From: Styela clava
Taxonomy: Eukaryota
Assembly (NCBI RefSeq): GCF_964204865.1
Contig: NC_135261.1
Coordinates: forward strand, 9,796,001-9,860,000
Direction of reading: 5' to 3'
Length of the DNA: 64,000 nucleotides
Below the pieces are notes generated by a model that did no database searches, was not told the origin of the DNA, and was given only the letters and a program-made list of their open reading frames with translations. A program made the position numbers and the translations under genes. This document shows, one piece after another, positions 13,254-57,719 of this stretch (within the stretch, counting starts at the first letter, position 1; the number at the start of each line of letters is the position of its first letter).

Positions 13254-13349
13254 AATAAATTTCCATTTTACACACTTGAGTTTTGTTTTTGTTAATGCCA
13301 CACTTTTTCGTGTAAATGCGACGTGCGTTCGACTTAACTACGATGATTA

Positions 13350-16893: not shown

Positions 16894-17167
16894 GTAACAA
16901 TTGATCAGATTCCTGTAAAATTGCGGAAAGAAAATTGAAATCAGATTTCCAGCGAATAGATATTAATAGAACATGGACAATTTACGATTTGAATGCCATG
17001 GACTGACTGCTCACTACTGATTAATTCATTGGTATAATTCCGTTGTAACGTTATGTACCAATATTTTAACCAGACCAGACAGAAGTAATATACTCGGTCG
17101 GACTCGGTAAAATATCTAACTATCAGTTGCTTTACTACTAATTATTCGTTCTGAACGAGGTATCGAA

Positions 17168-17207
<40 letters not shown>

Positions 17208-17260
17208 AACTACTTCTCACCTTTTGGTATTTCTAATTTGGGAAATTATGGTACATTTAA

Positions 17261-34759: not shown

Positions 34760-37515
34760 ATGTTATTTGCAATTTGTGTATTACTGCAATTGAGTCCAAT
34801 CAAAGGACAAGAACCTGTTTTATTTTTACCAATAAGTTCATTAATTGTTTTCCACACTGCCTTGATGTTGCCTTTGTTAGAGGCAAATTTAGATTTGTAA
34901 TAATTTGATTTCATTTTGTAGAGCAATCGAGTATAAAGGTTCCTGCATTCATCGAACTGTAATTTGTGCTTGTCATTTATGTTTTTATTGTATATTAATT
35001 TCTTATAAAGTTGTTGAGTTTGCGTAACTCAGTATCATACCAAGGTTTGTTTGATCTGTTTGTTTGTTTTTTGTAAGGAAAAGATTGAGAGTAAGCAGTA
35101 GAGAATTGTTCAAAAAAAATTTCAAAGCAAGTGTTGGGAATTGGGATCCTGGATGCTGCTGAAGTCATCAATATCAATAGAATTCAGTTCGTTCATAAAT
35201 GTATTCAAGTTGGACGAAGTAAACTGGCGGTAAAGCGTTTCAATTCTGTTCTGAATTTGCTTTTCTAGAAGAGAGCATTGTACAATTGGCAGATGATCAG
35301 AAACACATTCTGCTAAAACAGCACTATTAACTTTTTTATCATATACGTTTGTCCAAATGTGGTCTATACAGGTAGCAGAACTTGAAGTTATCCTGGTTGG
35401 TCCTGGTCACTAGAGCAAATATACTGATTTGAGCTGTTGTACATGAAAACACTGTTTATGTTGTTGAATTCATCATTGTCAGTATTGGCTGACTCAAGAA
35501 ACATTTGGTTTAGGTATTCAGGATCAAGAATTTTAGTAAGTGCCTGGGCTTCAGCTTTTTTTGAATGAAGGGAAGTACATAATTCTAATAAAATAATCCT
35601 CAAATGCATAACAGATATACAAGCTAGCCTGTATTCAATCTATAAATGAGAAAAAGACTGTTGAAAAAACGCTAACACACAGCGATATATTTAAACAAGT
35701 CAAAGCAACGCACAAGTATAAACCTGACGAAACGTGCTACGCAACGACTGTCCCCCTAAACAGCACAAAAAACGGAGCTGGCAGCATCGGTCAAAGGTCA
35801 TGAAAGTTGGTAATTGTCTTCATATCCATGATTATGTGTGTTTTATTTCATTGAATATGTCCGAAGAAATGTCAAAATTAATGTTTTCACGAGCATCAGC
35901 TTCTATTCTTATTCCAGTAACACTGGATAATCAGCAAAATATTAGAGCTGACGTTGCCATTCAATAACAATTCTTTCACTCAAATAGATCAGATTTTCGG
36001 GCATGGTTGCAAATATTCGCTCGTTTTCTGGTTTTGCTAGTCATTTGTAACGTGATTCTATCGATAGGTTACGGATACTACCTCATAAAAAATAGTCATA
36101 ACCAAACATGGCAAACCATTGAATAAGAAACAAGACCCCAAATAGGAGAGAGGGGGGTGGACATAGATTGGCCACACCACACCAAAATATATATATAACA
36201 CCACATCGCACACGCTTGCCATCATGATTCATTTACCATTGTTCATGTTGCCCGTGCTTTTTTACTTCTTTGATACTTTACAAACAAAATAGGAAGGAGC
36301 CTTGATGATAAGATCAATGATGCATATTCGTTAATATATATATAATATTCCAAGAAACAGGAAAGAAGAAAATAGAACATGTTTGCGCCTGTTGCATTTT
36401 AAGATGATGTGTGTACTCAACTTTTAATAATACTGAATTCCTGCGTGAAAATACCGATACCGAAATTTTCAATATTGTCTCAGCATCCCAACTCTCGACT
36501 TAAGCTTTATGAACATCGTTTGACCTCCAACGTCGCGACTTTTAACTGGCTATTCATAGGCGGAAGACAGAATTCATTGGAGCATGAAAACGGTTTTTTA
36601 GGCTTACAAAATGCAGAAATGTGGATGGGATTTTCAAGTTTATCTCAGTAACTTCAGTAAAGGAAGTTACTAGAGTTATAATGCGGGCGAATTATATGTA
36701 CCGGTACTGGTATACCATTATTTATATTCGTTTCAATACCTGTTATTGTAGTGTCGTATTGCTCCTGACAGTACATCAGTACAGCAGTATGTGCAGATTG
36801 ATGATTTCCCCACATTTTGGCATTCCTACATTCTGACATTTGGAGAAGATATTACAGCACTGTCGCCATACGGTACCGTATTTAAAGACATCAATAATAC
36901 TGTAATAACAGTGAATGGAAACTTCTCTTTTACGAGAGTTTAGTTCCATTAGGTAAGCATTCAGCAAAATACAGAAATAACGTCGACGGGCGGCGGGAGG
37001 TACGGTACCGGTAGGTTATTATTATCTTGACAAACATGGTGTGTTCTTAGGCATCTACGATCGTGTCAGATACCCTCGTTTCTGCAACTAGGCTATTGGT
37101 TTATGTTTCATTGGTCCATATATTGGGACGTCTGGGAATTGTACCACACTAAAAAAATTAAGTCATGAATAAGACATCAAACTTTGGGGTCTCGTGTAGT
37201 TTCGTACCGTACCTGACGTACTTGTACGTTGTAGGCGAAGGCGAAGCGTAACAATTTTTTGATATGTCAATCCTAACCCCCATCTGATTACGCCATTCAA
37301 AAATTAAATCATTACGACATCACAATCACAGAGCTTGCCAAATATACGCACAATCGACCGAAATGGCATTGGTGGCGACGATAAAGAACTGACTGACGTT
37401 ATTGGTCTCTCTCCTATTGGAATCGTTGCGACGAGCAATGAGAGAAATAACTGTTCGATTTTGGGTGCTCGTTTGCGCGTCTTGGATGGCAGTTTGTATA
37501 GTTTGAAAGGCTCTA

Positions 37516-38383: not shown

Positions 38384-38903
38384 AATAGAGACTTCTTTTT
38401 TACGAGAGTTTAGTTCCATTAGGTAAGCATTCAGCAAAATAACGTCGACGGGAGGTAGGCTATTATTATCTGGACAAACATGGTGTGTTCTTATGCATCT
38501 ACAGATCTACGGTCATGTCAGAAACCCTGGTTTTTGACTTTTTGCAACTATTGGTTTATGTTTCATTGGTCCATATATTGGGACGTCTGGGAATTGTACC
38601 ACACTAAAAAAATTAAATCCTAAAAAAGACATCAAACTTTGTTCTGATATTGCTGTATTGTACAATTTGAATTTCAATATTCGTTATTCTTCTATAGAAA
38701 ACCAGTAGACTAGGTGACAAGTATAGCTATATGCTTCACTGTACTGTGCTGTATTAGGTATTTTAGTGTACGAAAGATTATGCTGGAATAACTTCGAATC
38801 AACAATACCCAGGAAGACAAATAAGTTATTCATTTTCTGGCGATAGCGGCTTGTTGGAAAATATTTCGTGGCTGATAGTTAACTGTTAACGTTATATTGA
38901 AAA

Positions 38904-41900
38904 ATGAAGAATTTATTAAATTTTCTATGCATTTTGGTAAGACTTGTTTTGACTTTTTGTTTTGTTTTATCAATTATATATATATATATCTATCGCATGT
39001 TCTTCTTCCCTCTTCCAGTCTTCATGATTTAGGAATATTTTTTCGGTATGTAAGTATATCGAAAGTTCATTTTTAATTTTAAAAGTATGGCAATTTTGGC
39101 AAACGAATATGTTTACAAAAATTGTTGATGTCTTGAAATTTTCGTAAGTACAATGTTTGTGTTTATGGGTATGCAATATAGAAAAAATTGGGTACAGTAA
39201 TTATTGTTTAATAAAAATAACTGTAGGCCTATATAACATAAATTTAACACTAATTTTAATCTATATACCGTAATATATTTTGTTTGCAGGTATTTTTCTC
39301 TTCAACAAATGGAGAACTTGTTGATATTGATAGCAATAATATTGAAACAGTTTTGAGTGAGTAACATACTCTTATTGTGATATTAATTAAAGAATGAATT
39401 TCACATGAAAATATTCTAAGAATGTGTCTTTGTTCTCAGAAATAAGCTCATTACATTCTCTGAAATGACCCTATTTGATATCCTGTACTTCCAGTATTAT
39501 AGTTTTTTAGCATTCCTGAAAAGTATTAAAAATGACAATTGGTAATAACAAGAAATAATATTCAACTTATATTCAAATTGACTGGAGTGAAATCTAATTT
39601 TTCGTTTAAAAAAGACATTTTCTGAAATTAATCATTTTGTCTAAACTCCTACAGTGACCATCAGTATTTATCATTGTTGATTAATAACAGCTAGTTTTGT
39701 AAAAATCACCCAACTTTCCATTTAGATGATGGTAAACCTACAGGGATAGCCGATACTGAATAATCTAATATTCCAAAAACCTTTTGAATCAAATTTCCGA
39801 AGATTGAATATATTCTGAAATAAATCATGTTCAATAGATAACTTAGGCTATAATAAGGACCAGTGTTTATTTAATCAATTTCGCATTGGAAATATAAGAT
39901 TCAAGTTAAGATGAACAGTGATTTGATTGATTCTGTATTTTTAACAGTTTTCGAGACTTCAGTTACTTAATAAAAGGAAAATATTCTAAATTAAAAAAAT
40001 CAAGAATTTTAAATACTGAATAGGCCTATAGTTACTTCCAACTTTCTTTGAATATTCAGTCCAGTCGAACCAACCCAACAGCCAACATTAAACTCTCATT
40101 CAGAATATTATATTTTTTTCAACTTTTTTTAATCTATGTTTACAGATAGCCATGAACTTGTATTTATAAATTTTTATGCCGACTGGTGCCGATTCAGTCG
40201 AATGCTTGCTCCGATATTTAAAGCTGCATCTGATGAAGCGATTAAAAAATTTCCACAAACTGGACTCGTAGCTTTGGGAAGAGTCGATTGCGACAAAAAT
40301 CGTGAGTGAATATGAGAATTTTTTATTTTTTATATAACTTCTGATCGGAGAATACTGCAGTCTGCAGTACATGTCCTTAGTGAAAGAATAAGAAACGTAA
40401 TTTCAGATCTAATACAACTTGAAGCTAAATCGAAACCAAAATAATAATTTGCTATTCCTAACAAATTATGCGAAATAATTTTGATTATACTACGATATTC
40501 TGGTTAAATTCAAAGTTACGCTTAACATACGAGATCACAAATTCTTATATGGTTAAAGATGCAAATTGAGAAATTGAAAATGTGAAATAGTTACCGGTAA
40601 TACAATCATATTTCATCGGGTTTCCATTTATTAAAGTCATAGAGACTTACATGAACTTTTTTTGGTCTGTCTGCTAAATTCACATTCACAAATTTTCAAT
40701 TCAGTTTGAACCTGGTTTTAAAGTCTGTTTTTGTTATAGCATTTTGCCTAAATACCAACAATGTGATATTTCAAAATTGTTGATATTGTATTGTATTCGC
40801 CAAAATGCTCAATTTTTTGGCTGCCCTGATATATCTTATACTGGTATATAAAATTAATGAGAATAAATGAAATTAAGTGTATTTTTTGTTAACTTGACTA
40901 CAAATTTGAATTGCTGTTTCCACCATGTAGCACATATGGTAAGTTTCTTTAATAACTTCAATCCTTTATTTAGTACTAAATTTGTATTTGCAGCTGATAT
41001 TGCGCAAAGGTTCAGCGTCAATAAATATCCAACCATGAAACTTTTTCGAAACGGTCAGATGACCAAAAGAGAATATAGAGGTCAAAGATCAGCTGACGCA
41101 CTTGTGAATTTTTTAAAAGAACAAATGAAAGATCCGATTCATCATTTTGCAACTGAAGAAGAGATGGATGATTTTGAGGTTCGATTCCATTAAAAATTTA
41201 ATTCGTTTTGATTAACATTAATTTATTCATTTCGTCATACTCAGATCTAAATTAAAGCTTGTGACATACTGACTTGTTTCTTTCGTTTTTTAAACTTTTC
41301 TTTTTTATAACGCTCTGAATGCTTTGAATAATCACCTGTAATATGATTGAGTAATATATAGTTTTCAAGCTTTTGATACCAAAACATAGCTTGCTGTTTG
41401 GCTTGATACTTTCGGTAATATGTTGAGGTTATCATAATGGATAACACGAACAGTTGAAGCATACATAAAAATACAATACATATACGTTGTTGCATGATTA
41501 ACTTTCACAAAAATGATGTTATTCTCATCATAGTCAACTGATAAAGATACTGGCCTATATTTTTTGATATGCCATAAGAACTATGGTAGTTTTGTTAGTG
41601 TTTTTTGAAGCAGCTGCGATTTCATTTTAGAGAATGATGTTATTTTAAAAATTAACACCCATGCTATTTTCATTTCATAAATCATTTCTTATCTGTCACA
41701 GTTGTTTATGGAATTTCCTGAATTTTACTTTAAATACTGATATGTTTCTTTTTTTAGGCAAGAAAAAGGTCAATTATTGGATATTTCTCAAGTAAAGATT
41801 CTAAGGATTATGAAACATTCGAGAAAATTGCAAAAAGTCTAAAAGAAGATTGTGATTTCTTCGTTGCCATTGGGTGAGCTTTTTTACTGAAATCTTAGTA

Positions 41901-44900
41901 TTGGTAAGTTGTGTTAAAATTTAAAAGTAATCTCTCATTTATCATGCTTCATGTTTTCAACTGGTATGATTTTTAAAAGATTGGATTTGTTAAATTTTCA
42001 GAGCAAAATATTTTTTCTTCTAGCATGAACAATTTTTGATTATCTGAATTTCCATTTTCAGGGACGTATCTAGTAAAGAACGACAATCTGGAGATAATAT
42101 TATATTCAGGCCTACAGGGGTAAGAAAATGTATTTTTACTCTAATTCGTCTCAATTTGACCAAATAACAGTATTTCTGATTTCCCATAGGTCTGTACATG
42201 GAATTTTTATGCTATTGAATACTGCTAGTGCTAAAAATAGAAAAAATCCTTGTCTAATTCGTGGATTTGAGACAAAATTTGTATACTTTTTTGCATTTAA
42301 CTGGCTGTATTCAATGCAACCACATAGTAGTGGTTTTCTTATTCATATTGCAAGTATTATTTGTCATAATATATCATTTTAAAGTAAAAATAGGAGATAT
42401 GTTTAATTTTTTCTAATATTATTTTACACAATTTCGACATTTTCTGGTAGGTAGTATTCTAATATACTATTAAAGTAGAGTCAGAGATATGTATGTTCAT
42501 TTAATATGAAATCGAAATTGTCTAACAACTGAACTATCTTGTTTTTAAAGGGAGATCCTGACATGGTGTATCTCGGATCACTCAGCAACCACGATCTTCT
42601 AAAAGCCTGGTCAACAGATAAATGTGTACCTTTGGTAAAGTATAGATCCTAAACTATTTGCCAACTCAGGTGTGAGACTTGTGCATCTGTGTAAATAATA
42701 ATATAAACGTCATTCATATATATGTATTGTAGGCTTTAGATTCACAAGAAATACTTCTATCTAACTTATGAATAACTTATAAGTTATATGCAATGGCACT
42801 GTTGTATTTTTATATGATAACTTCTGCTTTACGGCCAAAAAAATTTTATCGCAGTTGAATGCCTTGTAGGTACTGTTTTTGTTTGTGTAAATAGGCACAT
42901 GATAAAGGAAAATCAATACAACTTGAGAACAAATATGACATTCTGTCATATGGATTGACATTTTCTGGAATATTTTTGTCTGTCATAAATATAGAACAAT
43001 AAACATATGCCATAATTGCTGTTTAGTTTGCAAAAAGGATTTTATTAATAATAGTTGGCTTGATTTTTTCTTCATAAACTGATGATTTATCTGTTTAGGT
43101 TCGGGAAATTACTTTCCAAAATGGTGAAGAGTTAACGGAAGAAGGTTTACCATTCCTCATTCTATTTCACAAGAAAGAAGATACAGAATCGTTGGAACTT
43201 TATAAAAAAGTTTTATCGAGGAACCTTATCCATGAGAAAGGTTAGTTATAATGAGATTTTGCGTTACAAGTGTTCTACTTGTGTGTTTGTAATTTATATT
43301 TTCTGAGCTGTCAAAAATGAATGATTGTGATGATTGGAATGATTGTGGAATTGTGAAAAAGTTGAGAATTGAGAATTGAAAAATCATACCGTGAGACTTC
43401 AATTGCTCAAAATGAAACTTAGAAATATTGAATATATGGTAATAACTTCAAAATGATTATAAAATTTGACTCATTTTGAACATATTATGATCTGAATCTA
43501 TTATCAATTACGCTGTTTTCCAACAGAGTATATATTCGGTGGTGGGTTATGTTTTGAATTTCTAACAAAGTTGTAATTTTGATATTACAGACCAAAAAAA
43601 AAAAGATTTTTAAAATATTTCTAACGGAAATTTATGTACCATGTTTCAAAATATTTTCAATACTGTACAAATTGAAATGCTTTATATCTGCAATTAAGTA
43701 TGAACTATATTTACAGTAAAATTTTTGTTTGATTTATTTCTGGTTCATGATTGGCAAGCTCAATATTTATATTTGTTTATGTTCAAAATCATTTGTCTGA
43801 TTTCCACATAGGTATTGTTATCATTAGTTTCCATTGAAATTGCCTCTGGCAGTGTTTTGTTCCTACCAATCCATATTATTGTTCGAGCATTGATTTTTTT
43901 ATTTGTAAACATTTATTTCAAGAACTCCTATTCTATGATTACTTGAGTACCGAGTATGCAGTAGAGTCTCTTTTATGCCCTCAGGCACTTTACTGTCTGT
44001 CATTGATAACTATAATATGGTATCATATTTATAACACCCTATGGCATTAATTACAGGGTTTTAAGTTATTAGTTTTACAACCAGTAACAGTGGCGTTTCA
44101 TTGAATAAAGTATATGTAAAAGATATCATTTATTGATTATTAAATATGATTCTTAATCATTTTATCACCAGTTTTATTGATCTTTTTATTTACATGATAT
44201 TATAAGCTTTTTCGGTTTATATTTGATCACATTCTTTTTAAACAACACAACTTATTATTTATTACACATAAAATATTTTGTTGGAAATTTTTTAAATCAG
44301 GAAAAAGCATTACTATTTTTTGTCATTATAATATAGCATAAACAATAAACATATTTCAATATGTGATCTTCCTACTAGTTATCTGACTATAATTGTATCG
44401 TGTCATACTATAGTACTTCCTAGTTTGTGACTCATTAAAATTGACGCGGTAACTGTTCAAGGAAGTAGCTTTGAATTACCTCGCTTTGGCATAATGGCTC
44501 AATAAAATAATGAAATGGTTGATGAAATGACTCAAACTGAAATGGTTATTTCCAAAAATGGAGGTTATAGTTTAGTTTTTATTTTATTAATATATAATAA
44601 GGAACATACTAATGATACTATTTCATTTTGCAATCTTTTTTTTTCCTCAAAAATTGATCATGTACCTCATAAGCTTGTTGACCTTTATTGCTTACACCCA
44701 AACCAGTACCAGTATTGCTTTAAAAATTTTTGCGTCTTATAGCCTGATTCGCCTTATGTAGGCCTATAAATAAAAAGCTGATCTAAGCAATTTATTGACA
44801 GTGCGACTTATGTTCGGTAAAAATTCGGTACCCAATCTCATTTTTTAATTCAATTTTTCTAATTTAAAATTTAATTTTTTTTAATTTGAAGTCAATTGCG

Positions 44901-47900
44901 GGATAAACTTAGTGAATCGGTCATGCCTGGTGTTTATATTTCTTAAATTTCCTAATGTAATAAATTTTTAATATTCTAAGCGGAGCGACTAACCTATATC
45001 TTATTCTGAATTTCCTATTGATGAATTTATAATGAACTTGCTAGAAAATAAATTATAAATAGGTGTGATTTTTTAATAAATACTACGATGCCATTGCTAC
45101 TTGCTAGTTGTAGTAATTTTGATATTTTTTGTGAATAAGGGTCTGCAGACAGTCCACAGCCGGATATGGACGTACTATAGTTTTTAAGAATCAGAATCTT
45201 CCCGATTCGGCATTGCTTACCAAACTTATTACACTATGGATAAGGTGGGGGGCATGACATTTGAACTCCTAATTTTAACCAGGCTCCAATGCCCAGCCCA
45301 GTTTGCTGTATCTGTTTCCAGTGCTTTGTATCAGTAAATCTATTTAGCTGAGTTGATAACTAATTATATACAAATTTTTCTACTACAGCTCGTGTCAACT
45401 TCCTTGAAGCGGATTGTGATACATTTTCACATCCTCTACATCATCTGGGAAAATCAACTTCCGATTGCCCCCTCATCGCAATAGATTCGTTCAAACACAT
45501 GTACTTGTTCCCAAATTTTAATGATTTGAGGTAAGTGTAATTAAAGAGAAATTTCTACATTTTTCTCCGATTGAATATGACAGATTATTATTGAAGAACA
45601 TTGGCATCTATAGTCAAAGTCCCAGATATTTAAATTCAAATCTCACTGTGGATGTGATGGCTTTTATAATGACTTCTTAAATATTATTATTTGACTTAGG
45701 AAAATGATATTTTTTGCATAATATTTTTTTCTTAAAATACCAATATACCCATCTCTAGAAATCTTGTTATTTTATCGATATATGTCTGCCTGTAATTTCT
45801 GTGTGACAAAATGTTGTATTTATTATAATAATGCTAAAAAGAGTACTAGACGTAAGTGAAAGAAAACAAATGTGAGCACAACTGAAACTAGTTATAGTCT
45901 ATTGAACATTCTTTCTACATTTCTTGATGTTGTAAACAAAATTTTCGTCGATAGTCTTTGAAGTTTAGTATACTCAAAATTTTTTTTCTTGGTATTAGAC
46001 ATAACTTGTGAAGCCACTGAAACCTCTGGCATATACTATAGAAAATATTATAATTTCGATCACCTGAACCCCTAATAAAATATATCTTTTTTGAATGACA
46101 TTCAAAATTCTTTCAAATAACTTATTAAAAATATCTATCGCAAATATAGAATATTGTGGAATGGATATGCTAAATTTAAAATATAGTATACGGTAGTTTG
46201 AAAGTTTTATGCACTGATTGATCATTATTCAACTTGCGTCTTATAGATTTTTCTGGTCTGACCGTGAATACTTTTGTAACATGCTGTGTGCCTGTCGACT
46301 ATTTTTAAGTTTACTTCTGATTTGTGAATGAGTCCTGGACCTGGCATGCGAATGTTTATGGTTTCTCGCTTTGTGTGTTGGAATTTCTGTCTAATATATT
46401 ATATATTACTTTGTATCATTAATGGGAATCTTTGAAGTACCTGTGTTCGAACACTCAGTCTTTAGCACAAGCAAGGCAACATACAACAATGAATTCTATC
46501 TTTTAATGGTTTGGTAGCCCAGTGGTCTTCAAACTTTTCAAGACGTGACCCCGTTTCAAAAAATTATGACGCATGATGAGCATTGGCGCCCCCAAAGTAT
46601 ATTTATTGAAATGAAAAAAAAAATAAAACCAATAAAAACTGACCACACATTTAACCGATTGCTTCTCTTCGCAGAGCTTTTGAGATTGTGGCATAATGTA
46701 GCTTAAGCTTCTTATCGATAGAACTTTTTGACAAACAGCGCATTTAACGTTGGCACTTTATTTTGGTTAAACTTAGCAAAAAATAAAGCAAACGCAACGG
46801 TCGTAGTCCATTACAGTGAAAACACCACAACTGTTTACTGTAAAATTTAAATTATTGTCGTTACACAATAGCCTTATTATAGAAATATCACTCTAATTCA
46901 GAATATCGCTAGTCGGCCTAGTGAAGTGTAGACTGCACACTGTTGTTTATCAGCTCATTCTTTTCCACACGAACCCATTTGTGATCAACATGTCATAATT
47001 ACTTTCTCGTAATTGCTCCTTGTCTGCATGCTTATTATTCGTGTGAAATGTATAGTAAAACTGTGTTATACTGACGTTTTATTTGAAATAAACTGTAATA
47101 TTATTGTCTACTGACAATTTGGTAATATCCAAGACATCACACACACAATAAAATAATAACAGAAGAAAACATCGCCGGACACTCTGCGACCCCATAAATA
47201 TTTAAGGCGACCCCACCTGGGGTCGCGACCCACACTTTGGTGATCACTGTGGTAGCCTATCTAAAAATCGAACTTCAAGCCACTTTCGTTGTCTGATATA
47301 TACCTAATAATTTATTTTCGAATGGAATAAGATATCATATTTGAATAGTTAATTACTTGAAAAACCATAAAGCTTCTATATGCTAATAGTTTTTTATAAG
47401 TGATATTATTCAATTTCTATATCTGTAATTTTCGATTTGTAAACAACTGGGACTTATCAAGTCTTTTTCTTCAATATGTCATATCTAAGATAGACTCTTA
47501 CAGTAAGATATAATAACATACCAACCTATTTTCATACTTGATTTACATATAATCAAATTTTCTATGGGTGAATCATAATTTCCTTCTAATTCCGCAACAA
47601 AGAGGAAGGTGTGCTTTATATTTCCTTTAGAAAAACAAATCACTACCTATATGGTACATAATGCAACTGCACAATATTTCTTGTGCTGTTCAAGATTTAT
47701 GAACACGGGTATACTGCGATGGCCTAATAATTTTGGTAAAGCACACGAGAGCTTTTTTTTAAGCAAGTCAGTCTATTATTCAATCTGGTCCAGCCTATTT
47801 GGTCAAATAGGCTTTTTTGAGCCCATAATTACTGATGTCTCTCCGAATCTAAATAGTTGATAAATAGCTTTATTCACTAATACTTGTCCACAACTGTTTT

Positions 47901-50900
47901 ATTAGCAATCCTATTTACTTTACCTGGTTAACTTCCCGCAGTTTTGAATTTGTTAAAAAGAACTTTTTGTGACCAAACTATTCTCAAGTATAAAAAGCCT
48001 TGTTGTGTGCCGATGATTTGTGCTATTGATTGAGTAGTTGTGTTGTATGAAGGCTGTTAGAGGGGGCAATTTATTAAAGTGATTTTCCTGGATGCTGTAA
48101 ATCTAAATATCTAAATGTGGATGACTTGTCTTATTTTTACAAGGTATGATATGTAGAGTGGGCTGTAGATTCATAATACATCATTTCAATGTCATAATAT
48201 TCATGGTAGCCTACGAGAGTTATGTTTGGTTACAAAATTGGATCATGTTCAAAGTAGATTAATTAAATTATTAGAGGATGTTACTTAGAATGGGCATACT
48301 TGAATAGGTATTTTGAAAGTATTCATTGTGTCCTATATTGACAAGCCTATGCCATTTTGAAATTGCATGTTCACGTAGAATGCATATTACATATTATATC
48401 ATTGTTTTAAATTTTTTTTTTTTTTAAATCACCATTTGGACATCTGTAGATTTATAGTATTACGAAAGGTTTAAAATCAATTTTCATTTATGCACATTTT
48501 ATGGCCATTTATTATTTTTACGTACTTGCTGATATATTAAGAATGTGTTATTTCTTGTTTGCGTCATATCCAATGTAATAAATATCTAATCTGTAGTCTT
48601 ATTTCTGGCAATGTCAATTTATTGCAATAAACTTTATTACTACCTATTTATGGTATATATATTAAAAACATAACAAGATTTTCTTCTGGTGCTAAATGCT
48701 ATGTTATATCATTTTGATGTGATGAGGTAACTTTTATTGAATTCACCCTGGCAGTAATCACTCTTTATTGAGGTACTGCTGACTAATTATTACTATTAAA
48801 CTCTATTTAACCAAGATTACTTACTATTGTGTGTTGGTGACTTTCAAATTTGGTGTTTATTGCGTATTTGTTTCATAGTAATCAAATCCACTTTATTTCG
48901 ATGTAATATCACAATTTATTTATTGACAATTGATCTACTAACCTTTTCTAAAATATAAAACTGAATTTAGGTTTGTGTATACAAGATAATATATGCTGAA
49001 TTTCTTCTTATAAAATTAGACATAAGTTGTACTAACGCTGTTCTAAGGAAAAATTGTACCATAAATTCAATACTTATTTATATGTTGCTTATTCACCCTT
49101 TTGTATATAGGTACTCCCGTAGTATGTGAACCAAGATGGCGGACAGCGGAACGTAGTATGTGTACCAGGTTAGGGTTAAGCCATAATTTCAGGTAAAAAT
49201 ACTGCGAGAGTCACTTGGCTAGTCCCCAAACTCGTAATAGAACTAAAATAAGGAAAATTGGGAATAAAATTAAGGCCCAACCTTAACCTGGTACACATAC
49301 TATACTATGTTCCGGTGTTCGCCATCTTGGTTCCCACACTACAGGAGTACCAATATATAAATTTTTATGTCTCTAGTTTATAAGAAACTCAATTTGGGAC
49401 TGGCTCACACTTCCTCACTGGTTAGTCCAAGCATTTAAACATTTCTATTTTTGGTTGCAGTGTTCCTGGAAAACTAAAGTCGTTTTTGGAAGATCTACAC
49501 TCCGGAAAACTTCACAGAGAATTTCATCATGGACCTGATCAATCTGACAACGCAGCAAAAGAAAATGCACCTCCGGTATGCCTTCAATATTATAATTATT
49601 TGGAATGGTTTGTTGTTACTGGTGTATTGGTGTTTAAGTGTAATTGGTGAAAGAGGTGCAGGTGGTGATATGGTTGGATGATTGGTTGTTTATATTTAAA
49701 AAGGGTCTAATGTTAAAAAAAAAGATATTTAGATATCGCCAATTTTATCAACAATTGCACTTGAGGTCCATACCGTCATCTTCAAGCTTTCGGGTTTTAC
49801 GTGTTGGCATCTGAGAGGCAGAATTTTAAATAAACATGAGTTGACATCAGAGATGGCCAAAACCTAATATTTTACTATTTCGAATACTTCTGAAAAAAAA
49901 ATTTTCCGAATATGAAATATCGAGTGCATTCTAAATTAAGTCTATGTTGAAAATTACATCAATCACTATATCTTCATGTTGATCACATCTGAAATGACAC
50001 AAATATAAAAGGTTTTTGTTTTCTCTGTGTTGTTTGCTACCAATTGAGATATTGCACTTTTGATCTACTTGTCTGACGGCTCCAAATCCCTAATTTTTAA
50101 ATAAAAATGTTTTAAATTATTCCTTTATTCAAAAATTTACTATATCTAATATAATGAATTTCGAAGGTATTCGATTCGTTTTGGACATCTCTGTTTGACC
50201 TGGTGCACTTTTTGTTTTTTTTTAAGTCGGGAGGGGTGGAATTTTTTATTCTTTTTTTTATCGTCTAGCTTGACACCATCGCTTTGAAGCAATTCCCTTA
50301 ACACAGTTTAACCCTATACATTAATAACTAAACTGAAGATTGATCATGACAGTTCTTCGAATATGTAAACAAACATCAAAATTTGTGTCAGTGTTTTCTG
50401 AGATCATCTTCATCAAATTGAAATTGTAAAATCAAATATGCCTCTGTTTTTTGCAAGTCAATATAATACAGATGCGTACTAGGTGACTTCTTCATATGAA
50501 TATTCTGAATATAATATAACCCCTAATTATGTGTTTTTGAATATGGAATGCCACCTCTTGGTAGGCAAAACATTAAGTAAGTTGGTGTTGGTCCAATTAT
50601 GGCGTGAGACTTTTTTACAACAAAAATATCTCGTTTATGATGTTCCTTAACATTTTTTAAAATTCTTGGGGAAAATGTTGATGAACATTTTTGAAAACAG
50701 TTATAAAAGTTTATTCATTATAGCAAAGTAACCAAGTATATTTTCTCAATTATTCGTTTAATACTCTCGGTGGAACTCGTATTGTAAAGCGTTTGACCTG
50801 ATGACCTGTTAAATGATTTTGTATGGGGGTTGTGACTGTGTGTGCTTTCGCTAGTTTCATTATATATAAAAAAAATAGGAAGGAAGAAAAGAATAACCGC

Positions 50901-51233
50901 ATGCTTTATTATTGTCAAATGTGTCAGATAATTTTATTTTTCATACCAACAAAACAACAACACGTAACTCTTTTCTCATTGTTCTTTTTCTGCTTTTCTT
51001 TTTATTGCATGTTCGGTGTCACTCACGTCTGCACTTTCCTCACTTGCCAACTTTTCGTTTTTACACAATTCACATATAAAAAGAAGAAAACACCTCCCGG
51101 AACTGTTGAAAAGATACAGGAAGAAAAGAAGAAACAAGATCCAAAAACTACGCCACCAGAATCCATCTTCAAAAAATTAGAACCGTCAGAACATAGATAT
51201 TCGCTCCTAAAACGGTCGAAGGACGAATTATAA
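38904..51233 (+). CDS. ERP44: Endoplasmic reticulum resident protein 44, isoform A; exons 38904-38936, 39290-39356, 40146-40301, 40994-41178, 41758-41873, 42062-42119, 42551-42634, 43099-43240, 45389-45530, 49461-49575, 51084-51233; about 415 aa
   Basis: Signal peptide, NFYADWCRFS active site, KYPTMKLFRNG..KREYRGQRS, PLVREITFQNGEELTEEGLPFLILFH, HPLHHLGK, IAIDSFKHMY, DLHSGKLHREFHHGPD, and tail PPESIFKKLEPSEHRYSLLKRSKDEL*. All junctions are GT-AG and phase-consistent. Confidence 0.95.
46520..47249. mobile_element. hAT-type MITE in ERp44 intron 9
   Basis: TIRs CAGTGGTCTTCAAAC...CTTTGGTGATCACTG, subterminal GCGACCC motifs and an 8-bp TSD TGGTAGCC (46512-46519 and 47250-47257). Confidence 0.9.
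49110..49351. mobile_element. Palindromic MITE (GGTACTCC...GGAGTACC)
   Basis: About 75-bp imperfect inverted arms. Shares its left end with the interspersed family at about 3960, 13878, 16503, 19668 and 53950. Confidence 0.8.
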
Positions 51234-53587
51234 TGCGAAACTTTTTACAGACGTAAAAAATTTAGTAAATTTGAAACTATAATTGTGAATTAAGAAGGGC
51301 TTGAACTCACTCAAATCTCAATTAACGTTTAAATCGATTGTGAGATGCAAAATTTTTAAGAACTGGATTTCTTTTGTATTATTAAACTTGTTTTAGAAAA
51401 TGTATGTCATTACGTAATTAACATCAACATGACATGCTTCACATAAACCTAACACATAACTTTCAAAATGCCATTTATTACTCTAGTCTTCAGCTGTGGT
51501 GCATGTTACCCATTTACTTGGTCGTCTAATACCCCCTGAACTCACCACTGGGTATAATGATAGAACGACTATATTTAAATGAAATTTACGCCTAACATAG
51601 ATTGATAATGATAGTGATAAAAAAGGATTAATGATCTACAAATAATCCTAAAATAGTAAATTTAATTTTTTTATTTAATTACGCCAGTGTGCTTTTATAT
51701 ACCTTATATAGAAGCGTAATTGAATATTTATTGTGCATAATGTTTGAAACAGAGTAAATTCTTCTGATGCAGAAAATGGGAATATTCACTTGAAATAGCA
51801 ATGAAGTTAGAGCTGAAATTACATTTTTGTTCTGTTAGGATATTTATTTGATTTTTTCGTGAAGCTTGTTTTAGTTTTTTTTGCTGAATTTGTCATATTT
51901 TGTTGCCATCGTGGTAAGATATTTTTATCTTGTGGAAATGTCTATGGTAATAAAACAGCAGACAAAGATAATGAAGCGTTTAAGTAAATATAAACTTATA
52001 TAGAGAATGATTTTTAATCATTTATAACCATTTAACTTCATTGTAGCATATTTAAGCATTAAATTACTCTGTCTGTGATACAACTTCTCCAAGTGTCTTT
52101 GATTTCTAATTTTTGTTTGAGCCACATAGGACAAAAGCTCTCACTGTTAATTCTTGTTGTTTGAAAAAGAATGAAAATTTATCGATTTATATTAAAAATC
52201 AAGCATACATAGCTGCTATTTTGCGTTATGTCTAAACATCGTTCGTTTGCATTTATTATTATGTAGCGACAGGCCGCAACTGGCACATCCTGTAATTGTG
52301 TTAACCGGTAAAACAATTTTTGATGACACCGCTTTTAATAGAAGTACTAGGAAGCAATGTCTTAAGCATGCTTGAATAGCCATTGATACTTGATGCTAAG
52401 AAAGTAATCGAAGTGCTAATTCTTGAAATAAATGAAACAAAACTGGAGTCATTCGAAGAAAAGTACAATTTATTTCCGACGGTCAACACCATTGAATGAA
52501 GATTTTGTTTCTATTCATTTCCAAAAACTTTGTTTGATGTTTTTATGACATAACATAAACAGAAAACCAATTTTTATAATAAATTGTGTGCTGTTCCCTT
52601 GCTAGAATTACCATACCCTTGAATATGTGTATTTTATGACTATGTCCTCATAAAATGACAAATATATCAAATATTTTTGTGAATTTACGGACGCAAAATA
52701 CCTAATTATAATTATTTGAGGATGTTTGATTATTTCGAAATAGCAAGGGCAACTGTATGTGATGGGTGGGAAGAATTGTGATTATTTTCGAATTATCAAT
52801 TTGGAATTGTGGCGGCACAATTGCTTAAGTTCCCAAGTTAAATATTTCCGTAAATATTACATCTTTGAATTTAATAGTTGGAGAAATTTTGGATGCTAGA
52901 TTTAGTTATATAGACATCTCGCTATTATGAATTAGCATGAAAATTATCATTATTATTGATATGGATTCGTCATTTTAAATTTGAACTTCAATTTTTTTTT
53001 TGTGATTTGTTATGTACCAGCTTTATGCTGGGTTTAATTGTGTAATTGAGTCTTTGAAAATAAAATTCGTATGGAGTGAAATTCTAGTCGAGTAAAATGG
53101 AAAATATAAGAAATTTAGTATAAATATAGGTGTAGTATGAAGTCTAGCAAGTTTGACTTTCTAGCTCTCATTAATGGATTCATCTGACGACAAGGAAAAT
53201 TCTGATAATACATCATGTAATAGGTAAGATCTCAATTTTAATTGATGAATTATTTCTGTTTTTTTACAGACTTAAAAAAATTTCACAACCAGATATTGGG
53301 CCTTTTTAGATCTTCGGGGGACTGTTCTTTACCATTTTTGTTCTGTTTATGATTTGCCAGTAACTTATTAAAAGCTTCATTCACTCTCTAGCCTATTTTT
53401 TATTTGCGCGAATTTTATGTTTGTTATTTCACAATTTATTTTGGTGTCTAATCAGAATGTTGGTGGTGTTTCTGATTTCTTTGATTTTGCATGTTCTCAT
53501 TGAGTCATATAATTTTTCTAATCTAAATTTAATTTATTTTTTTATTCTAAAATTTTGATAACAATTTCTGTAATGATTGTTTTTTAG

Positions 53588-54795
53588 CCTCCACTACCTT
53601 CTTTGACACCAGAAATTAAGGTAAGATACTTATAAAAACTCTATATTTACCTGTTAATTCTGGTTTCAACAAGGATTTCAGGTCGAAGCATGGTTTTTGA
53701 TCATTTCGAAACCTGAATTGTATGTTTAATATTTCCATACTCTTGAAATTTAAAGATATTTCAGACTTCTAGACATAGAATAGGAGAACAAAAGTGTAGA
53801 GTGTATCAATATATGTATTGATAGAGGCCACCGCAATTCTGTGTGGAAGGAATAATTCTTGCTACCTACTGCCTAAAGATGTACAGTTAACGGTTTATTT
53901 CCTTCATCAGATTTCCATTTTTTTCGTGAATTAGTGACTTAAATTTTTTGATACTTCCCTAGTGTGTGTACCAGGTTAGGTGTAGGGCATAATTTTATTC
54001 TGATTTTCCTTCCATTACAAATTCGGGGACTGTCTGTGTTAGACAAGTGAATATACCCCCTGCAAGGTTTTCTCTAAGGGGCGCCATTGCGCAGTATCAC
54101 CAGGCCACTTGCACAGTAAGATCCAAATCCCGCACACTTGTAACATAGGTTTGCAGAGCCTGGCTTGTTATATTTTCGCCTAGCTAGAATGCTCGTTTCG
54201 TGTTTTTGAGTTAAATGTGAACTTTGTTCGCATTCTGATAAGATATTATACTATTGCTAAACTTTATTTGGTTTGTAAATCATTTAGGACTCTGCTCAGC
54301 TTTAAGGTATTCATGCTCATCAAAACTAACATTTGCTCAGTGTAGCATTTTCTTAGTGAAAACACTGACTCCATTGCCCATAAGTTTTAGTCCTATTTTA
54401 CATCTTGATGTAAAGTAGGCGAACAAAATTAGTTACCCCATATTATATTGGTACACACACTTCTGGAGCGTCAATTTTTTGCATATTTGATGAAAGAATT
54501 CATCATCTCGGACATCATGCAGATATTTCTAATAGGAAACATATACCAAATCCTCCCTCATATCTCAAGGCTTGCAATTTCTTGAAATTTTCATTCTATT
54601 AATCAGGAACATCTCAAGAAGCAAGGTCGTGATCCTGATGAAATAGAGAAGCAAGCACAAGATCAATTCTTGAAACAACAAAAGGAGGCAACAAAAGATA
54701 AACCAAAACTCACAACTGCTAAATCAGTTTTCAAGAATCTGATGCCGAGTGAACGCCGTTATACACTCATGGATCGGGTTAAAGATGAACTGTGA
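53588..54795 (+). CDS. ERP44: ERp44 alternative 3' exons (isoform B): micro-exon 53588-53620 plus terminal exon 54607-54795; full isoform about 439 aa
   Basis: tttttag|PPLPSLTPEIK|gtaaga (33 nt, phase 0-0), then aatcag|EHLKKQGRDPDEIEKQAQDQFLKQQKEATKDKPKLTTAKSVFKNLMPSERRYTLMDRVKDEL*. Phase 0 matches the donor at 49575. Not shown in the ORF track. Confidence 0.85.
53950..54472. mobile_element. Interspersed repeat copy with a nested TIR element (54063-54367)
   Basis: The family sequence ...GAATATACCCCCTG / CCCATA.GTTTTAGTCC...CTTCTGGAGCG is split by an insert with imperfect TIRs CAAGGTTTTCTCTAAG / CTTAGTGAAAACACTG. Confidence 0.65.
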
Positions 54796-57719
54796 TTACA
54801 TAGAGATGTGTAGTTAAGAATTCTGTTTTTTTTTAGTTAAATGAAGCCAGTTTTTAGTTTTTATTGACAAAATTAAACATGTGATTTTTAGTTGGCTTTC
54901 AAGGAAATTTTATTTGGTGCAATTTTTGGAAATTTTTTTTCTGGTCAATAGAATATGCTTTCACTGTTGGTCTGTTATAAAAGGCTTTGTTTACGCTGCC
55001 TTTTAGGAAATGAAGATATTCTATAAAATTATCATTTCTAGTATCAGTATGACTGAAATGACATACAGGGATGTCCATATCCCAAAATTACATCATTCTA
55101 AAATTGTATTTCATTTTGACTGTTCGGAAATTCTTGAAAAAAAAACAGTTCTGTAGCAAATCAATATATTTTGAGTGGGCTTTAAACTTTTTGCTGCATG
55201 AAATTTGACCCAAATTGTGTTTTTAGTATGAAAATGAGTAGACAAAATATTTTAATCAAATCGTGAAGAAAATTACAGGATTTTTAATATCTTTGTTTCG
55301 TGCATATTAATCATTGTTATCTCCAACTTTTTTTAGACAATGTAAATTAGTGTCTTAAAATATTTCAATGAAGCAAATGTTGTTTCGAACATCTTTGTCT
55401 CGATGTGCAATCAAAATTCACAAATGTTGAGGTGAATTTCATTATAAAATCATTTCACTTTGAAGCCAAGATTCCCCTGAAGATTTTTTAGTTTGTGTAT
55501 GAGATTTGCAAGACATAAACTCTTCTGTGCATAGTCTGCTTTCTGAAGATAATTGCCTAAATTATGTAACTCCTGGTCATTAATTTTACATTTTATTTGA
55601 ATCCCTTTGAATGAACTTGGCATCACTATTATTACTCGACTGATCACTAATACTCAAAGACTTATGGTTGTTAATTTTTGTGCTACAAGAACCTGAACCT
55701 GAATCAATGTTATCGGTGATATTTGCTGTTGCTGCATCGTATATGCTTTCTTTGATCTCCATAAATTGCTTTGAATTGTCATTTGTTAATGCTGTAAGAA
55801 GAAATTTCTTTAAAAATAGTTTTTCTGAGAAAATATGATGAAAGTAGGCCAAACATGCTCTTTTATTTCTTCTTGGTAGGTTGATGAATCGTGAAAATCA
55901 GGAATTTTGAGGAATAAAATATGGTTATTAAAAAGTATGCATTCTTTTTATCTGATTACTGCGGTAATGGAAGAGAATTCGGTATTTTACTGGAATGTGT
56001 TATAGTGGCAAATATCCCGATGTTGGGATGAAACGAAAGTACAAATCTCCGGCGAAGTTGATACTTGTGATTGTGAAACTGAGTAAAATCGCTGTAATTA
56101 TCTCGCCCTTATAATTTTTTCACGATCTACGAGAAGTTATAGGAAGCGTTATCCTGAACCAAGGCTGCAAACCAACTAGCGCTAGGGAGAGCGATGTATG
56201 CCCCTGTAAAATCTTCACTTGAGTTCGTCGGTGCAACGAGGCTATCGAGACGATTATATTCCTCCTTCGACGGAAGACTTTCGACGACTGATGCCAAATC
56301 TCCGTAAAATGTGTTGGTGGGACTTTCAATTTTGGAAGCCATTACGTGAAGCCTAGTAACGACTGTATCATGACATTATTTATTATATGGTGTTTGTGTG
56401 CAGATGACTAATAAGTATGAAATCATTGAAATGACTATGGGCGAAGTGATCCCACGTGCTAAAAAGAGCCAAAATGACAAATAAAACAAGCATAATGTTG
56501 GAAAAATGAAATATGTTAGCTGAATTATAATGATATTGAGTATGTTTAGTGTCTGAAATCATACTATGGAACCATTTTATGAGCGTGTTTTATAACACCG
56601 CACCGAACTGGGCTCTGAACGAACCGTCACTGATATGTAGAAAACTATTAGATCCTGAGAGGCCGCATAGCTTCGCTATTAACTATTCTAATTTATATTA
56701 CACCCTGGGTGAGGCTATCTTAAGTGTATGTTTTTTTTAACATGACTCACAAGCAGGCGACACCGAGATAATTAGGTCTGACGTGATAATCACTTGAGCT
56801 ATTTCATAATCAGGTGACTCAGAAAATTGGGAGTTTTGAAACCGACCATAAGCGGTGAAGTTAGCCAATTGTATAAAAACGATATCAGTATACATCGTAT
56901 TCCATTCACTTTTCATGTAAAATGATGACACATAAGATCAGTGTACTGGGTATTGACGAATTGAAGCTACAAATACCTCAACCACCAACTGAGGGTTCAA
57001 TAAATTAGGAAAGATTGTTCCATGGTAAAGATCCCAATCACTCAAGAAATTCTGCAACCCTGCTCGTTTATTTATTTGGCCTGTTCTTGAGTGTGCACCT
57101 AAAAATATTCCGCTTAATTGATAAAATAATAGAGAATACATAGTTTTTTTTTTTTTTTTTTTTGTATATATTTATTAATATATAAAACACGGTTGATCGG
57201 TACATCTACAACATTATTAATCTCTAATCATGGACAAAGGTGCCGCTGCTCGATAACCACCACTGATTTCCCGCGTCCTTTTCATCCTGTAATATGGCCT
57301 ATTTATAATTCATTGCCATTTGCATGTTTGCGCCTATTTAAACTATGGTTATATATAAACTACTTATTAGTGTTTATAGTGTTCGCATTCAGGCTATTTC
57401 TAGACAATATATACAACACGTATCAGCATTTCAGACCTTTACTTACCCGATTAATCAGGGAATACCCTACGAGTTATCCGATGGGATGGGATTTTCAAAC
57501 CTGTATCGGTACACTTTATTCTTAAAACATAACTTCCGAGTTTCCAAATTAAATTAGATGACGAATCTTGGGTGTCGCTGCTCGATAACCAAATTTGGTT
57601 CCCCGCGGCTTCCCTTCCCCAGTAAAAATGTGTGTTAAATTTTGTTTATCTTTTGATTTTGTATGTTATTTTTTTGCTGGTTGGAAAAAATAAAATTGAC
57701 TATGACTATGACAATACAC

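What the first reader, a model, noticed from the sequence alone, without database searches (positions are those of the whole stretch)
49461..54795. ERp44 with two duplicated, mutually exclusive regulatory C-tails, both ending in KDEL
Seen: after the shared His-rich exon (phase-0 donor at 49575) there are two homologous terminal exons. A is ...TTPPESIFKKLEPSEHRYSLLKRSKDEL* and B is (PPLPSLTPEIK)EHLKKQ...LTTAKSVFKNLMPSERRYTLMDRVKDEL*. There is an AATAAA at 51949 between them and no second copy of upstream exons. Known: the ERp44 C-tail covers the CRFS active-site Cys and client-binding cleft, and opens in a pH/Zn2+-dependent way to expose the retrieval motif; the Thr of RYTL contacts the active-site region. 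Inference: exon duplication created a switchable autoinhibitory lid (linker 24 aa longer in B, PPES to TAKS, RYS versus RYT, His versus Arg) that could tune client capture or ER-Golgi cycling by tissue. I know of no description of this.
Basis: partly seen in the sequence, partly recalled or inferred. Interest (0 to 1): 0.8.

Follow-up and report, generated by a model that had tools for sequence, protein, structure and literature searches.

The report
ERp44 gene with two alternative tails
This invertebrate genome's single ERp44 chaperone gene carries an old duplicate of its last coding exon, and RNA data show both versions of the regulatory tail are spliced onto the same body; what the second tail does is untested.

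Summary
The shared His-rich exon (49461-49575) ends in phase 0. It is followed by tail exon A (51084-51233) and tail B in two exons (53588-53620 and 54607-54795). Both tails end in KDEL.

RNA-derived contigs from three studies carry GT..AG joints 49575>51084 (3 of 4 runs), 49575>53588 (4 of 4) and 53620>54607 (4 of 4). The stated refutation, that exon B is never spliced to exon 10, therefore fails.

The gene and both tails are single-locus in the 377-Mb genome. A and B2 share 23 of 49 residues while third codon positions are randomised (14 of 49 identical). This points to an old duplication with both copies under constraint.

A is the canonical tail: it matches the human ERp44 tail and keeps PPES. 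B is derived: it is 24 residues longer and lacks the proline that wedges into the Zn-binding His cluster in human ERp44.

A metagenome scan turned up a second, unrelated animal transcript with two tandem ERp44 tails, both evolving synonymously.

The functional "switchable lid" idea remains inference. Conservation in related sea squirts could not be tested. My paper searches found no description.

The parts
38905..38937 (+). Putative exon 1: ATG plus the start of a signal peptide (MKNLLNFLCIL), donor gtaaga. Approximate, read by eye.
   Evidence: Sequence print. Inference only: no RNA was laid here.
39290..39356 (+). Exon 2 (VFFSSTNGELVDIDSNNIETVL..). Boundaries read by eye.
   Evidence: ORF and sequence.
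40146..40301 (+). Exon 3: a-domain with the CRFS active site (FYADWCRFS).
   Evidence: ORF. Pfam Thioredoxin PF00085, 30.5 bits against a cut-off of 23.5.
40994..41178 (+). Exon 4: rest of the a-domain (DIAQRF...DDFE).
   Evidence: The only strong match in the genome (E 4.6e-36; the next best is E 1.9e-6 at 46% identity).
41758..41874 (+). Exon 5: start of the b domain.
   Evidence: ORF. PF13848, 24.1 bits, below the cut-off of 27.
42048..42164 (+). Open frame holding exon 6 (DVSSKERQSGDNIIFRPTG). Exact splice sites not set.
   Evidence: ORF. Matched to ERp44 by eye only.
42550..42636 (+). Exon 7 (GDPDMVYLGSLSNHDLLKAWSTDKCVPL). Approximate.
   Evidence: 40-73% identity to ERp44 proteins.
43099..43241 (+). 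Exon 8: b' domain (VREITFQNGEELTEEGLPFLILF..).
   Evidence: PF13848, 31.2 bits.
45391..45531 (+). Exon 9: b' domain with HPLHHLGK. Start approximate. It ends ..TTTGAG|gtaagt.
   Evidence: PF13848, 41.8 bits. Aligns to human ERp44 271-314, E 1.1e-16. Its last 30 bases are the loose end joined to 49460/61 in 4 of 4 runs.
49461..49575 (+). Exon 10: shared His-rich exon (LHSGKLHREFHHGPD), phase-0 donor used by both tails.
   Evidence: Aligns to human ERp44 317-352, E 1.7e-12. Single copy in the genome. Donor of both joints.
51084..51233 (+). Tail exon A: 49 codons plus TAA. Canonical tail ..TTPPESIFKKLEPSEHRYSLLKRSKDEL*.
   Evidence: Joint 49575>51084 in 3 of 4 runs. Matches the human ERp44 tail, E 4.3e-5.
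51234..52472 (+). Likely 3' UTR of isoform A. Minimum extent: coverage continues at falling depth to about 53200.
   Evidence: Contigs and depth in tables 2 and 8. Contigs cannot show true 3' ends.
53588..53620 (+). Tail exon B1: 33-nt micro-exon PPLPSLTPEIK.
   Evidence: Joints 49575>53588 and 53620>54607 in 4 of 4 runs.
53948..54474 (.). High-copy repeat with imperfect 26-nt inverted ends, inside intron B1-B2. Not part of the gene's function.
   Evidence: Depth in the thousands and many variable joints.
54607..54795 (+). Tail exon B2: 62 codons plus TGA. Divergent tail ..KLTTAKSVFKNLMPSERRYTLMDRVKDEL*.
   Evidence: Joint in 4 of 4 runs. Only two tail-like places in the genome, this one and A.
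54796..55300 (+). 3' UTR of isoform B. Minimum extent: one contig runs on past the laid stretch.
   Evidence: table 8 (records 8, 16, 24, 32).

Best explanation
This is a single-copy ERp44 gene whose terminal coding exon was duplicated in tandem long ago.

The shared exon-10 donor (49575) is spliced in one of two ways. One route uses a nearby, weak acceptor (51084). That gives isoform A, which ends in that exon and its own 3' UTR. The other route skips A to a strong acceptor 4 kb downstream (53588). That gives isoform B, made of micro-exon B1 plus B2. The architecture is therefore alternative last exons.

Both isoforms share the a-b-b' body, the CRFS cysteine and the histidine cluster. They differ only in the C-terminal lid.

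- **A** is the canonical lid: PPES, F..L.PSE, RY-Ser-L, KDEL.
- **B** keeps the strand that lies over the active site (F..L.PSE.RY-Thr-L) and KDEL. It has a linker 24 residues longer and has lost the PPES prolines.

Shown here: the sequence, the splicing, the single-locus status, and the old age and constraint of both copies.

Inferred: the B lid closes less tightly or responds differently to pH or Zn2+. In human ERp44 the first PPES proline sits between the three Zn-binding histidines in the closed state. On this reading, cells would set ERp44's capture-and-retrieval cycle by choosing a tail.
For: **Splicing.** GT..AG joints:

| Joint | X1 | X2 | X7 | X4 |
|---|---|---|---|---|
| 49575>51084 | 46 | 132 | 155 | absent |
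| 49575>53588 | 433 | 57 | 89 | 317 |
| 53620>54607 | 474 | 75 | 85 | 252 |

The four runs come from three studies. The exon 9>10 junction is present in 4 of 4 runs.

**Homology.** A and B2 share 23 of 49 residues. tblastn E is 1.4e-10.

**Age and constraint.** Nucleotide identity is 74 of 147. Third-position identity is 14 of 49, second-position 36 of 49. pS is about 0.99 against pN 0.37. The flanks show no DNA similarity.

**Copy number.** The tails occur only at this locus, and exons 4 and 10 have no close second copy in the genome.

**A is canonical.** It hits the human ERp44 tail (E 4.3e-5). B2 gives no ERp44 hit at E <= 10. 22 of 25 distinct ERp44 tails in my panel carry PP[ED][ST]. B2's best local score in that panel is to A (107, against 92 for the next). 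Two other unidentified organisms have an exon-10-like exon followed 1.8-2.2 kb later by one terminal tail exon, which is the A-type layout.

**Roles of tail residues.** PMC3699783 passages cover T369. PMC6363758 passages cover Pro353 and the His cluster.

**Shared exons.** They keep LHSGKLHREFHHGPD identical to human.

**Recurrence.** Transcripts L017 and L018 from another animal carry two ERp44 tails. Tail 2 differs between the two contigs at 4 codons, all synonymous in its own frame and none synonymous in the other two frames.
Against: - No relative of this species could be examined, so conservation of B is inferred from codon patterns alone.
- Depths are one figure per contig, and the runs are only guessed to be RNA. 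The spliced joints show that RNA-derived sequence is present.
- Sample tissue or stage is hidden.
- No protein-level evidence exists for either isoform.
- In run X4 exon A is covered only by an unspliced contig (50598-52472, depth 27.8). Some A-region signal is therefore not isoform A mRNA.
- 3 of 25 other ERp44 tails also lack PPES, so losing it need not change function.
- No spliced isoform was modelled or folded, because the joined step was left out by rule.
Confidence: 0.8

Rival explanations
1. The two last exons matter mainly for their different 3' UTRs, through mRNA stability, localisation or translation control. The two tails would be functionally equivalent lids, and the duplication simply let each UTR carry its own copy of an indispensable tail.
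For: Each tail comes with its own long, unrelated 3' UTR (coverage; no similarity between flanks). Both tails keep every residue class known to matter in the covering strand and KDEL. Isoform ratios vary between samples, which UTR-based regulation would also predict.
Against: B has diverged well away from the metazoan consensus, losing PPES and gaining 24 residues. Yet it stays under constraint. A mere placeholder could have stayed canonical. A second animal also keeps two different tails.
Confidence: 0.2
2. One of the two tails is splicing noise or a decaying duplicate with no role.
For: B2 is not recognised as an ERp44 tail by phmmer against solved structures. A's acceptor is weak, and A's junction is missing in one run.
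Against: Each junction is the majority form in two of the four runs. Both frames are open and end in KDEL. Synonymous sites are saturated while 23 of 49 residues and the key motif are kept. A neutral copy of that age would not keep these.
Confidence: 0.04
3. Assembly artefact: a collapsed or duplicated haplotype, or a misjoined fragment of a second ERp44 gene.
For: None found.
Against: A and B2 are only 50% identical in DNA. Independent RNA contigs from three studies join exon 10 to each tail at canonical splice sites. No other copy of exons 4 or 10, or of the tails, exists in the genome.
Confidence: 0.01

Closest known systems
Human ERp44 and its regulatory C-terminal tail (structures 2R2J, 5GU6, 5XWM; Vavassori 2013 PMC3699783; Watanabe 2019 PMC6363758)
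   Same: CRFS active site, Trx-like domains and the histidine segment LHSGKLHREFHHGPD are shared. So is a tail with F..L.PSE.RY[T/S]L followed by a KDEL-type signal. Tail A aligns to human residues 350-382 of chain 2r2j_A.
   Different: The papers I read describe human ERP44 with 12 coding exons and a single tail (PMC3500226 passages). Here there are two alternative tails. Both end in KDEL rather than RDEL. A has Ser at the Thr369 place and His where human has Tyr. B lacks PPES (the Pro353 wedge) and has a 24-residue longer charged linker.
Tandem duplicated exon substitution / mutually exclusive exons (PMC8373072 and PMC9741552; seen as search listing and abstract only)
   Same: Neighbouring homologous exons derived from a tandem duplication. 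They give isoforms identical except for one homologous segment. The duplication is old and both copies are constrained.
   Different: These are terminal exons with their own stop codons and 3' UTRs, not internal cassettes. The copies differ in length and in exon number (1 against 2).
Alternative last exons coupled to alternative polyadenylation (general mechanism; named from my own knowledge, no paper read)
   Same: One donor is spliced to a proximal or a distal terminal exon. The proximal acceptor is weak and the distal one strong.
   Different: Usually the alternative ends are unrelated in sequence. Here they are paralogous and both encode the same functional module plus the retrieval signal.
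Unidentified marine animal transcripts L017 / L018 (metagenome contigs Ga0307390_10011051 and Ga0307403_10001024)
   Same: An ERp44 with two tails, both ending in RDEL and both under purifying selection. One is canonical (NTSPPESTFQKLAPSENRYTLVRDEL). The other is divergent, follows a much longer linker and has PPQS instead of PPES.
   Different: The order is reversed: the divergent tail comes first, and the canonical tail starts 5 nt after its stop in another frame. Only the long form is seen as RNA. The nearest named proteins are molluscs, a brachiopod and an annelid at 57-60% identity, so this is probably an independent event.

Membership tests
ERp44 (PDI-family chaperone) | Thioredoxin-like a domain with a single-cysteine CRFS active site | tested here: met
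   FYADWCRFS is in the exon 3 open frame. PF00085 scores 30.5 and 30.2 bits on exons 3 and 4 against a cut-off of 23.5.
ERp44 (PDI-family chaperone) | Redox-inactive b and b' Trx-like domains | tested here: met
   PF13848 scores 31.2 bits on exon 8 and 41.8 on exon 9, against a cut-off of 27. Exon 5 scores 24.1, below the cut-off. Exon 9 aligns to human ERp44, E 1.1e-16.
ERp44 (PDI-family chaperone) | Conserved histidine cluster at the b'/tail border (human His299, His328, His332) | tested here: met
   Exon 10's DLHSGKLHREFHHGPD is identical to the human chain. Exon 9's HPLHHLGK aligns with human HPLLHIQK. Metal binding itself was not tested.
ERp44 (PDI-family chaperone) | C-terminal tail with the covering strand (human ..SEYRYT369LL) and a KDEL-type retrieval signal | tested here: met
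   A has PSEHRYSLL..KDEL and B has PSERRYTLM..KDEL. A aligns to the human tail. The hydroxyl is kept in both (Ser in A, Thr in B). The role of T369 comes from PMC3699783.
ERp44 (PDI-family chaperone) | PPES motif whose first proline (human Pro353) packs between the cluster histidines in the closed state | tested here: inconclusive
   Tail A has TPPES (met). Tail B has TTAKS at the aligned place (not met). 22 of 25 distinct other tails have the motif. Role from PMC6363758.
Mutually exclusive tandem-duplicated cassette exons | Homologous neighbouring exons from a tandem duplication | tested here: met
   23 of 49 residues identical, E 1.4e-10. The copies lie 3.4 kb apart.
Mutually exclusive tandem-duplicated cassette exons | Internal exons of like size, flanked on both sides by shared exons | tested here: not met
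   Both are terminal, each with its own stop. A is one exon of 150 nt. B is two exons of 33 + 189 nt.
Alternative last exons | One upstream donor joined to two different terminal exon sets in RNA | tested here: met
   Joints 49575>51084 and 49575>53588.
Alternative last exons | Separate cleavage/polyadenylation sites for each end | not testable with these tools
   Contigs cannot show 3' ends. AWTAAA hexamers are at chance density (365 against 355.6).

The most novel reading that the evidence does not exclude
Dual-tail ERp44 may be a recurrent, selected device in invertebrates. By choosing between a canonical lid and a long-linker lid lacking the proline wedge, cells would run two set-points of the pH/Zn2+-gated capture-and-retrieval cycle. 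The wedge-less tail would leave the histidine cluster free to bind Zn2+. That would give an ERp44 that is more readily open, with the client site and KDEL exposed. Its independent appearance in a sea-squirt-like genome and in an unrelated marine animal (L017/L018) would then be convergence on the same solution.
Probability: 0.2. Interest if true: 0.75.

Novelty: new variant of a known kind. Interest (0 to 1): 0.55.

Why it matters
ERp44's tail is the moving part that decides when the chaperone grabs clients in the Golgi and when the KDEL receptor can take it back. So far this has been probed only with engineered human mutants (T369A/C, histidine mutants, tail deletions).

A gene that naturally encodes two lids on one body is a ready-made tail-swap experiment. 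One lid is canonical. The other lacks the proline that separates the Zn-binding histidines and has a much longer tether. It could show which tail features set the pH/Zn threshold.

It would also add a chaperone example to the short list of old duplicated-exon isoform pairs. The second case found here suggests the arrangement is not a one-off.

If the two isoforms turn out to behave alike, the finding reduces to an annotated-type splice variant of modest interest.

Tried and rejected
**1. Relatives**
- The one whole-library protein job went on exon 4. It returned 884 hits with no self hit and no evident sea squirt. The best full-length hits were a sponge, a mussel and nematodes. In hindsight a tail query would have served better.
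- The word search with B2 alone found no candidates. Its length filter allows only proteins of 34-108 aa, so this says nothing about full-length proteins.
- A nematode protein whose tail shares four 5-residue words with tail A was searched on its tail alone. It gave 55 hits, and none was this window's protein.
- Region-limited searches from other proteins were considered and dropped. A test on held proteins showed this species would not rank apart: 188 against 180-186.
- The search for related loci on bacterial genomes and viral contigs found nothing, as expected.

**2. Second tails in other metagenome loci.** None was found in L010, L015 or L016 (6-7 kb downstream read), L012 (about 1.1 kb) or L011.

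**3. Poly(A) hexamers.** They occur at chance density.

**4. Isoforms of mussel and sponge ERp44 in one cluster.** Their tails are identical.

**5. Papers.** Searches listed no paper on alternative ERp44 tails or on ascidian ERp44. I saw listings and abstracts only for those. I read passages of PMC3699783, PMC6363758, PMC3500226 and PMC7973864. Supplements were closed and not asked for. [quoted passage not shown]


Full report
**What is in the sequence**

The + strand of the window carries an ERp44 gene from about 38905 to at least 55300. The exon with the active site reads FYADWCRFS. The exon pieces score as Thioredoxin (PF00085) and Thioredoxin_6 (PF13848). Exons 9 and 10 align to human ERp44 with E 1.1e-16 and 1.7e-12.

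Exon 10 (49461-49575) encodes ..DLHSGKLHREFHHGPDQSDNAAKENAPP and ends in phase 0 at CCG|gtatgc. Two terminal coding units follow it:

- **A:** 51084-51233, 49 codons, ..TTPPESIFKKLEPSEHRYSLLKRSKDEL*.
- **B:** micro-exon B1 53588-53620 (PPLPSLTPEIK) plus B2 54607-54795 (62 codons, ..KLTTAKSVFKNLMPSERRYTLMDRVKDEL*).

So is the count that B is 24 residues longer.

**Is the similarity real, and is anything else duplicated?**

A aligns without gaps to the last 49 residues of B2, with 23 identities. tblastn gives E 1.4e-10 in the window and 1e-4 in the whole 377-Mb genome. In the genome these are the only two tail-like places. Exons 3, 8, 9 and 10 have no second copy in the window. Exon 10 is unique in the genome, and exon 4's only other matches are weak, at 46% identity or less. 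So only the tail was duplicated.

**RNA**

One search for runs gave nine small contig sets guessed to be RNA, plus four others, all from one coded organism. I laid four of them, drawn from three studies, on 49400-55300. The contigs carry GT..AG joints exactly at the predicted places:

| Joint | X1 | X2 | X7 | X4 |
|---|---|---|---|---|
| 49575>51084 | 46 | 132 | 155 | none |
| 49575>53588 | 433 | 57 | 89 | 317 |
| 53620>54607 | 474 | 75 | 85 | 252 |

The end of exon 9 is joined to exon 10 in all four runs.

By junction depth, A is about 10% and 0% of A+B in the two runs of study P1. It is about 70% and 63% in the runs of P2 and P3.

Caveats:
- Depth is one figure per contig.
- The runs' RNA status is the tool's guess, though spliced joints show RNA-derived sequence.
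- Sample identity is coded.
- In X4 exon A is covered only by an unspliced contig (50598-52472).

Coverage runs on past A's stop to about 52.5-53.2 kb at falling depth. This fits a long or multi-site 3' UTR, but contigs cannot show ends. The AATAAA at 51949 exists but means little, because AWTAAA occurs 365 times in the window against 355.6 expected.

**Age, constraint and polarity**

Between A and the aligned part of B2, 74 of 147 bases agree. Second codon positions agree at 36 of 49 and third positions at 14 of 49, which is about random for this base composition. pS is about 0.99 against pN 0.37, and the flanks share no DNA similarity.

A copy drifting neutrally for that long would not keep an open frame, the F..L.PSE.RY[S/T]L motif and KDEL. 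Both have therefore been under selection since an old duplication.

A is the ancestral type, on four grounds:
- It matches the human tail (E 4.3e-5), while B2 gives no ERp44 hit at E <= 10.
- B2's best local score in that panel is to A (107 against 92).
- Two unidentified organisms in metagenome contigs have an exon-10-like exon followed 1.8-2.2 kb later by one terminal tail exon.

**How it most likely works**

Shown: one donor and two alternative last-exon sets. The proximal acceptor is poor (..cacatataaaaag|) and the distal one strong (..gattgttttttag|).

Inferred: the usual competition between splicing to the first acceptor plus cleavage there, and skipping to the second.

The protein consequence follows from what is published for the human protein.

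- Thr369, the Thr of RYTLL, hydrogen-bonds to the Cys29 thiolate. T369A gives a constitutively open, pH-insensitive ERp44, and a locked tail hides RDEL (PMC3699783, passages). I placed residue numbers by offsetting the 2r2j chain.
- The three histidines His299, His328 and His332 bind Zn2+. In the metal-free closed state Pro353, the first Pro of PPES, lies between them and moves out on Zn2+ binding, releasing the tail (PMC6363758, passages).

Both tails here keep a hydroxyl at the 369 place (Ser in A, Thr in B) and keep the covering strand. A also has His, and B has Arg, where human has Tyr. Only B has lost both prolines (TTAKS), and it hangs on a tether 24 residues longer, rich in Lys, Glu and Gln.

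My reading, as inference, is that B is a lid with altered coupling to the histidine/Zn2+ switch. The alternative that the two lids are equivalent and the 3' UTRs are what matter remains open.

**A second case elsewhere**

I scanned metagenome contigs with a degenerate pattern for F[KQ][KN]LxPSExRY[ST]L. It gave 11 loci.

- Ten of the 11 carry ERp44 tails with a C-terminal DEL. L014's match is not an ERp44 tail.
- Three are long single open frames of 466-502 aa (L009, L013, L019).
- Five are genomic-looking contigs with a single tail.
- Two, L017 and L018, are about 96% identical transcripts of an unidentified animal.

In L018 one open frame (57-1448) runs through ERp44 exons 5-10 without introns. 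It continues through a roughly 260-residue insert after HREFHHGPDSG and ends ..SSQPPQSMFKHLFPSETRYTLLRNPRDEL*. Five bases after that stop, in another frame, lies a perfect canonical tail, NTSPPESTFQKLAPSENRYTLVRDEL*.

Between L017 and L018:
- Tail 2 differs at 4 codons. All are synonymous in its own frame, and all would be non-synonymous in the other two frames.
- Tail 1 differs at 7 codons, 6 of them synonymous.
- The 3' UTR differs at 44 of 445 columns.

So a second animal keeps two ERp44 tails under selection. The order is reversed, and only the long form was seen as RNA. Its nearest named proteins are molluscs, a brachiopod and an annelid at 57-60% identity. None of the 97 newly returned proteins (P0213-P0309) among the 120 listed hits carries two tail motifs after the His segment. 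This looks like an independent event, but the organism is unknown.

**What could not be done**

I did not test that.

No sea-squirt relative could be reached:
- The word search cannot see full-length proteins from a short tail.
- The genome tools hold no relatives.

Whether a public annotation already lists the two isoforms could not be checked. The protein collection returned neither isoform.

The joined step (joined isoform sequences, their search and their folding) was left out.

**Comparison and verdict**

This is a bona fide ERp44 by every sequence feature tested. It works like an alternative-last-exon gene whose two ends are paralogues. It is not a classical mutually exclusive cassette pair.

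Five paper searches listed nothing on alternative ERp44 tails, and the ERp44 papers I read treat the tail as single.

I rate it a new variant of a known kind. It is real, expressed and selected, with a specific and testable mechanistic lead (loss of the proline wedge, longer tether). It has no functional data and no comparative data from close relatives.

Noticed in passing
L017 78-262; L018 57-1534: Transcripts of an unidentified marine animal encode an ERp44 with a roughly 260-residue insert and a divergent RDEL tail. A second, canonical RDEL tail follows 5 nt after the stop in another frame. Between the two contigs, both tails differ almost only at synonymous sites.
   Followed up: partly
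window 53948-54474: A high-copy repeat lies in the intron between B1 and B2. It has imperfect 26-nt inverted ends (77% complementary). RNA contig depth reaches 4,500-18,000 on its two arms, and many contigs replace its middle with other letters. It looks like a miniature inverted-repeat transposon family.
   Followed up: partly
window 50598-52472: In run X4 a single 1876-nt contig (depth 27.8) runs unspliced from intron 10 through exon A into its 3' UTR, while the A junction is absent. The depth is higher than in the rest of intron 10 (about 7-17). It may be an unspliced precursor, an internal transcript start or another transcript.
   Followed up: no
window 49543: T>G is seen in 3 of the 4 runs laid (X1, X2, X4). 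It changes Ser to Ala in the linker part of exon 10 (..GPDQSDN..), so it is probably a common allele. The only listed variant inside B2 (54669 C>T, in 3 of 4 runs) is synonymous (TTC>TTT).
   Followed up: partly
window 55586-55852 and 56127-56342, minus strand: Open frames of 88 and 71 aa lie on the opposite strand just downstream of isoform B's 3' UTR. One RNA contig (X2, record 16) runs about 470 nt past 55300. A convergent neighbour may therefore overlap the UTR.
   Followed up: no
window 37051-37149 and 38443-38604: Two open frames upstream of the gene end in the same peptide (..LVYVSLVHILGRLGIVPH). These are two copies of some repeat just 5' of the ERp44 start.
   Followed up: no
L010 6121-6297, L015 7165-7341, L016 1531-1707: Genomic contigs of an unidentified organism have an exon 10 that is 75% identical to the window's. 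Their single tail, ..SPPESVFKNLKPSEHRYTLNRDRDEL, combines features of both window tails (VFKNL as in B, SEHRY as in A). No second tail lies within 6-7 kb downstream.
   Followed up: partly
protein P0240 (Dreissena polymorpha, 520 aa): Its long tail holds two TSPP.. segments (TSPPDGG.. and TSPPESAFRKL..). This hints at an internal partial repeat of the tail region in a mussel ERp44 model.
   Followed up: no
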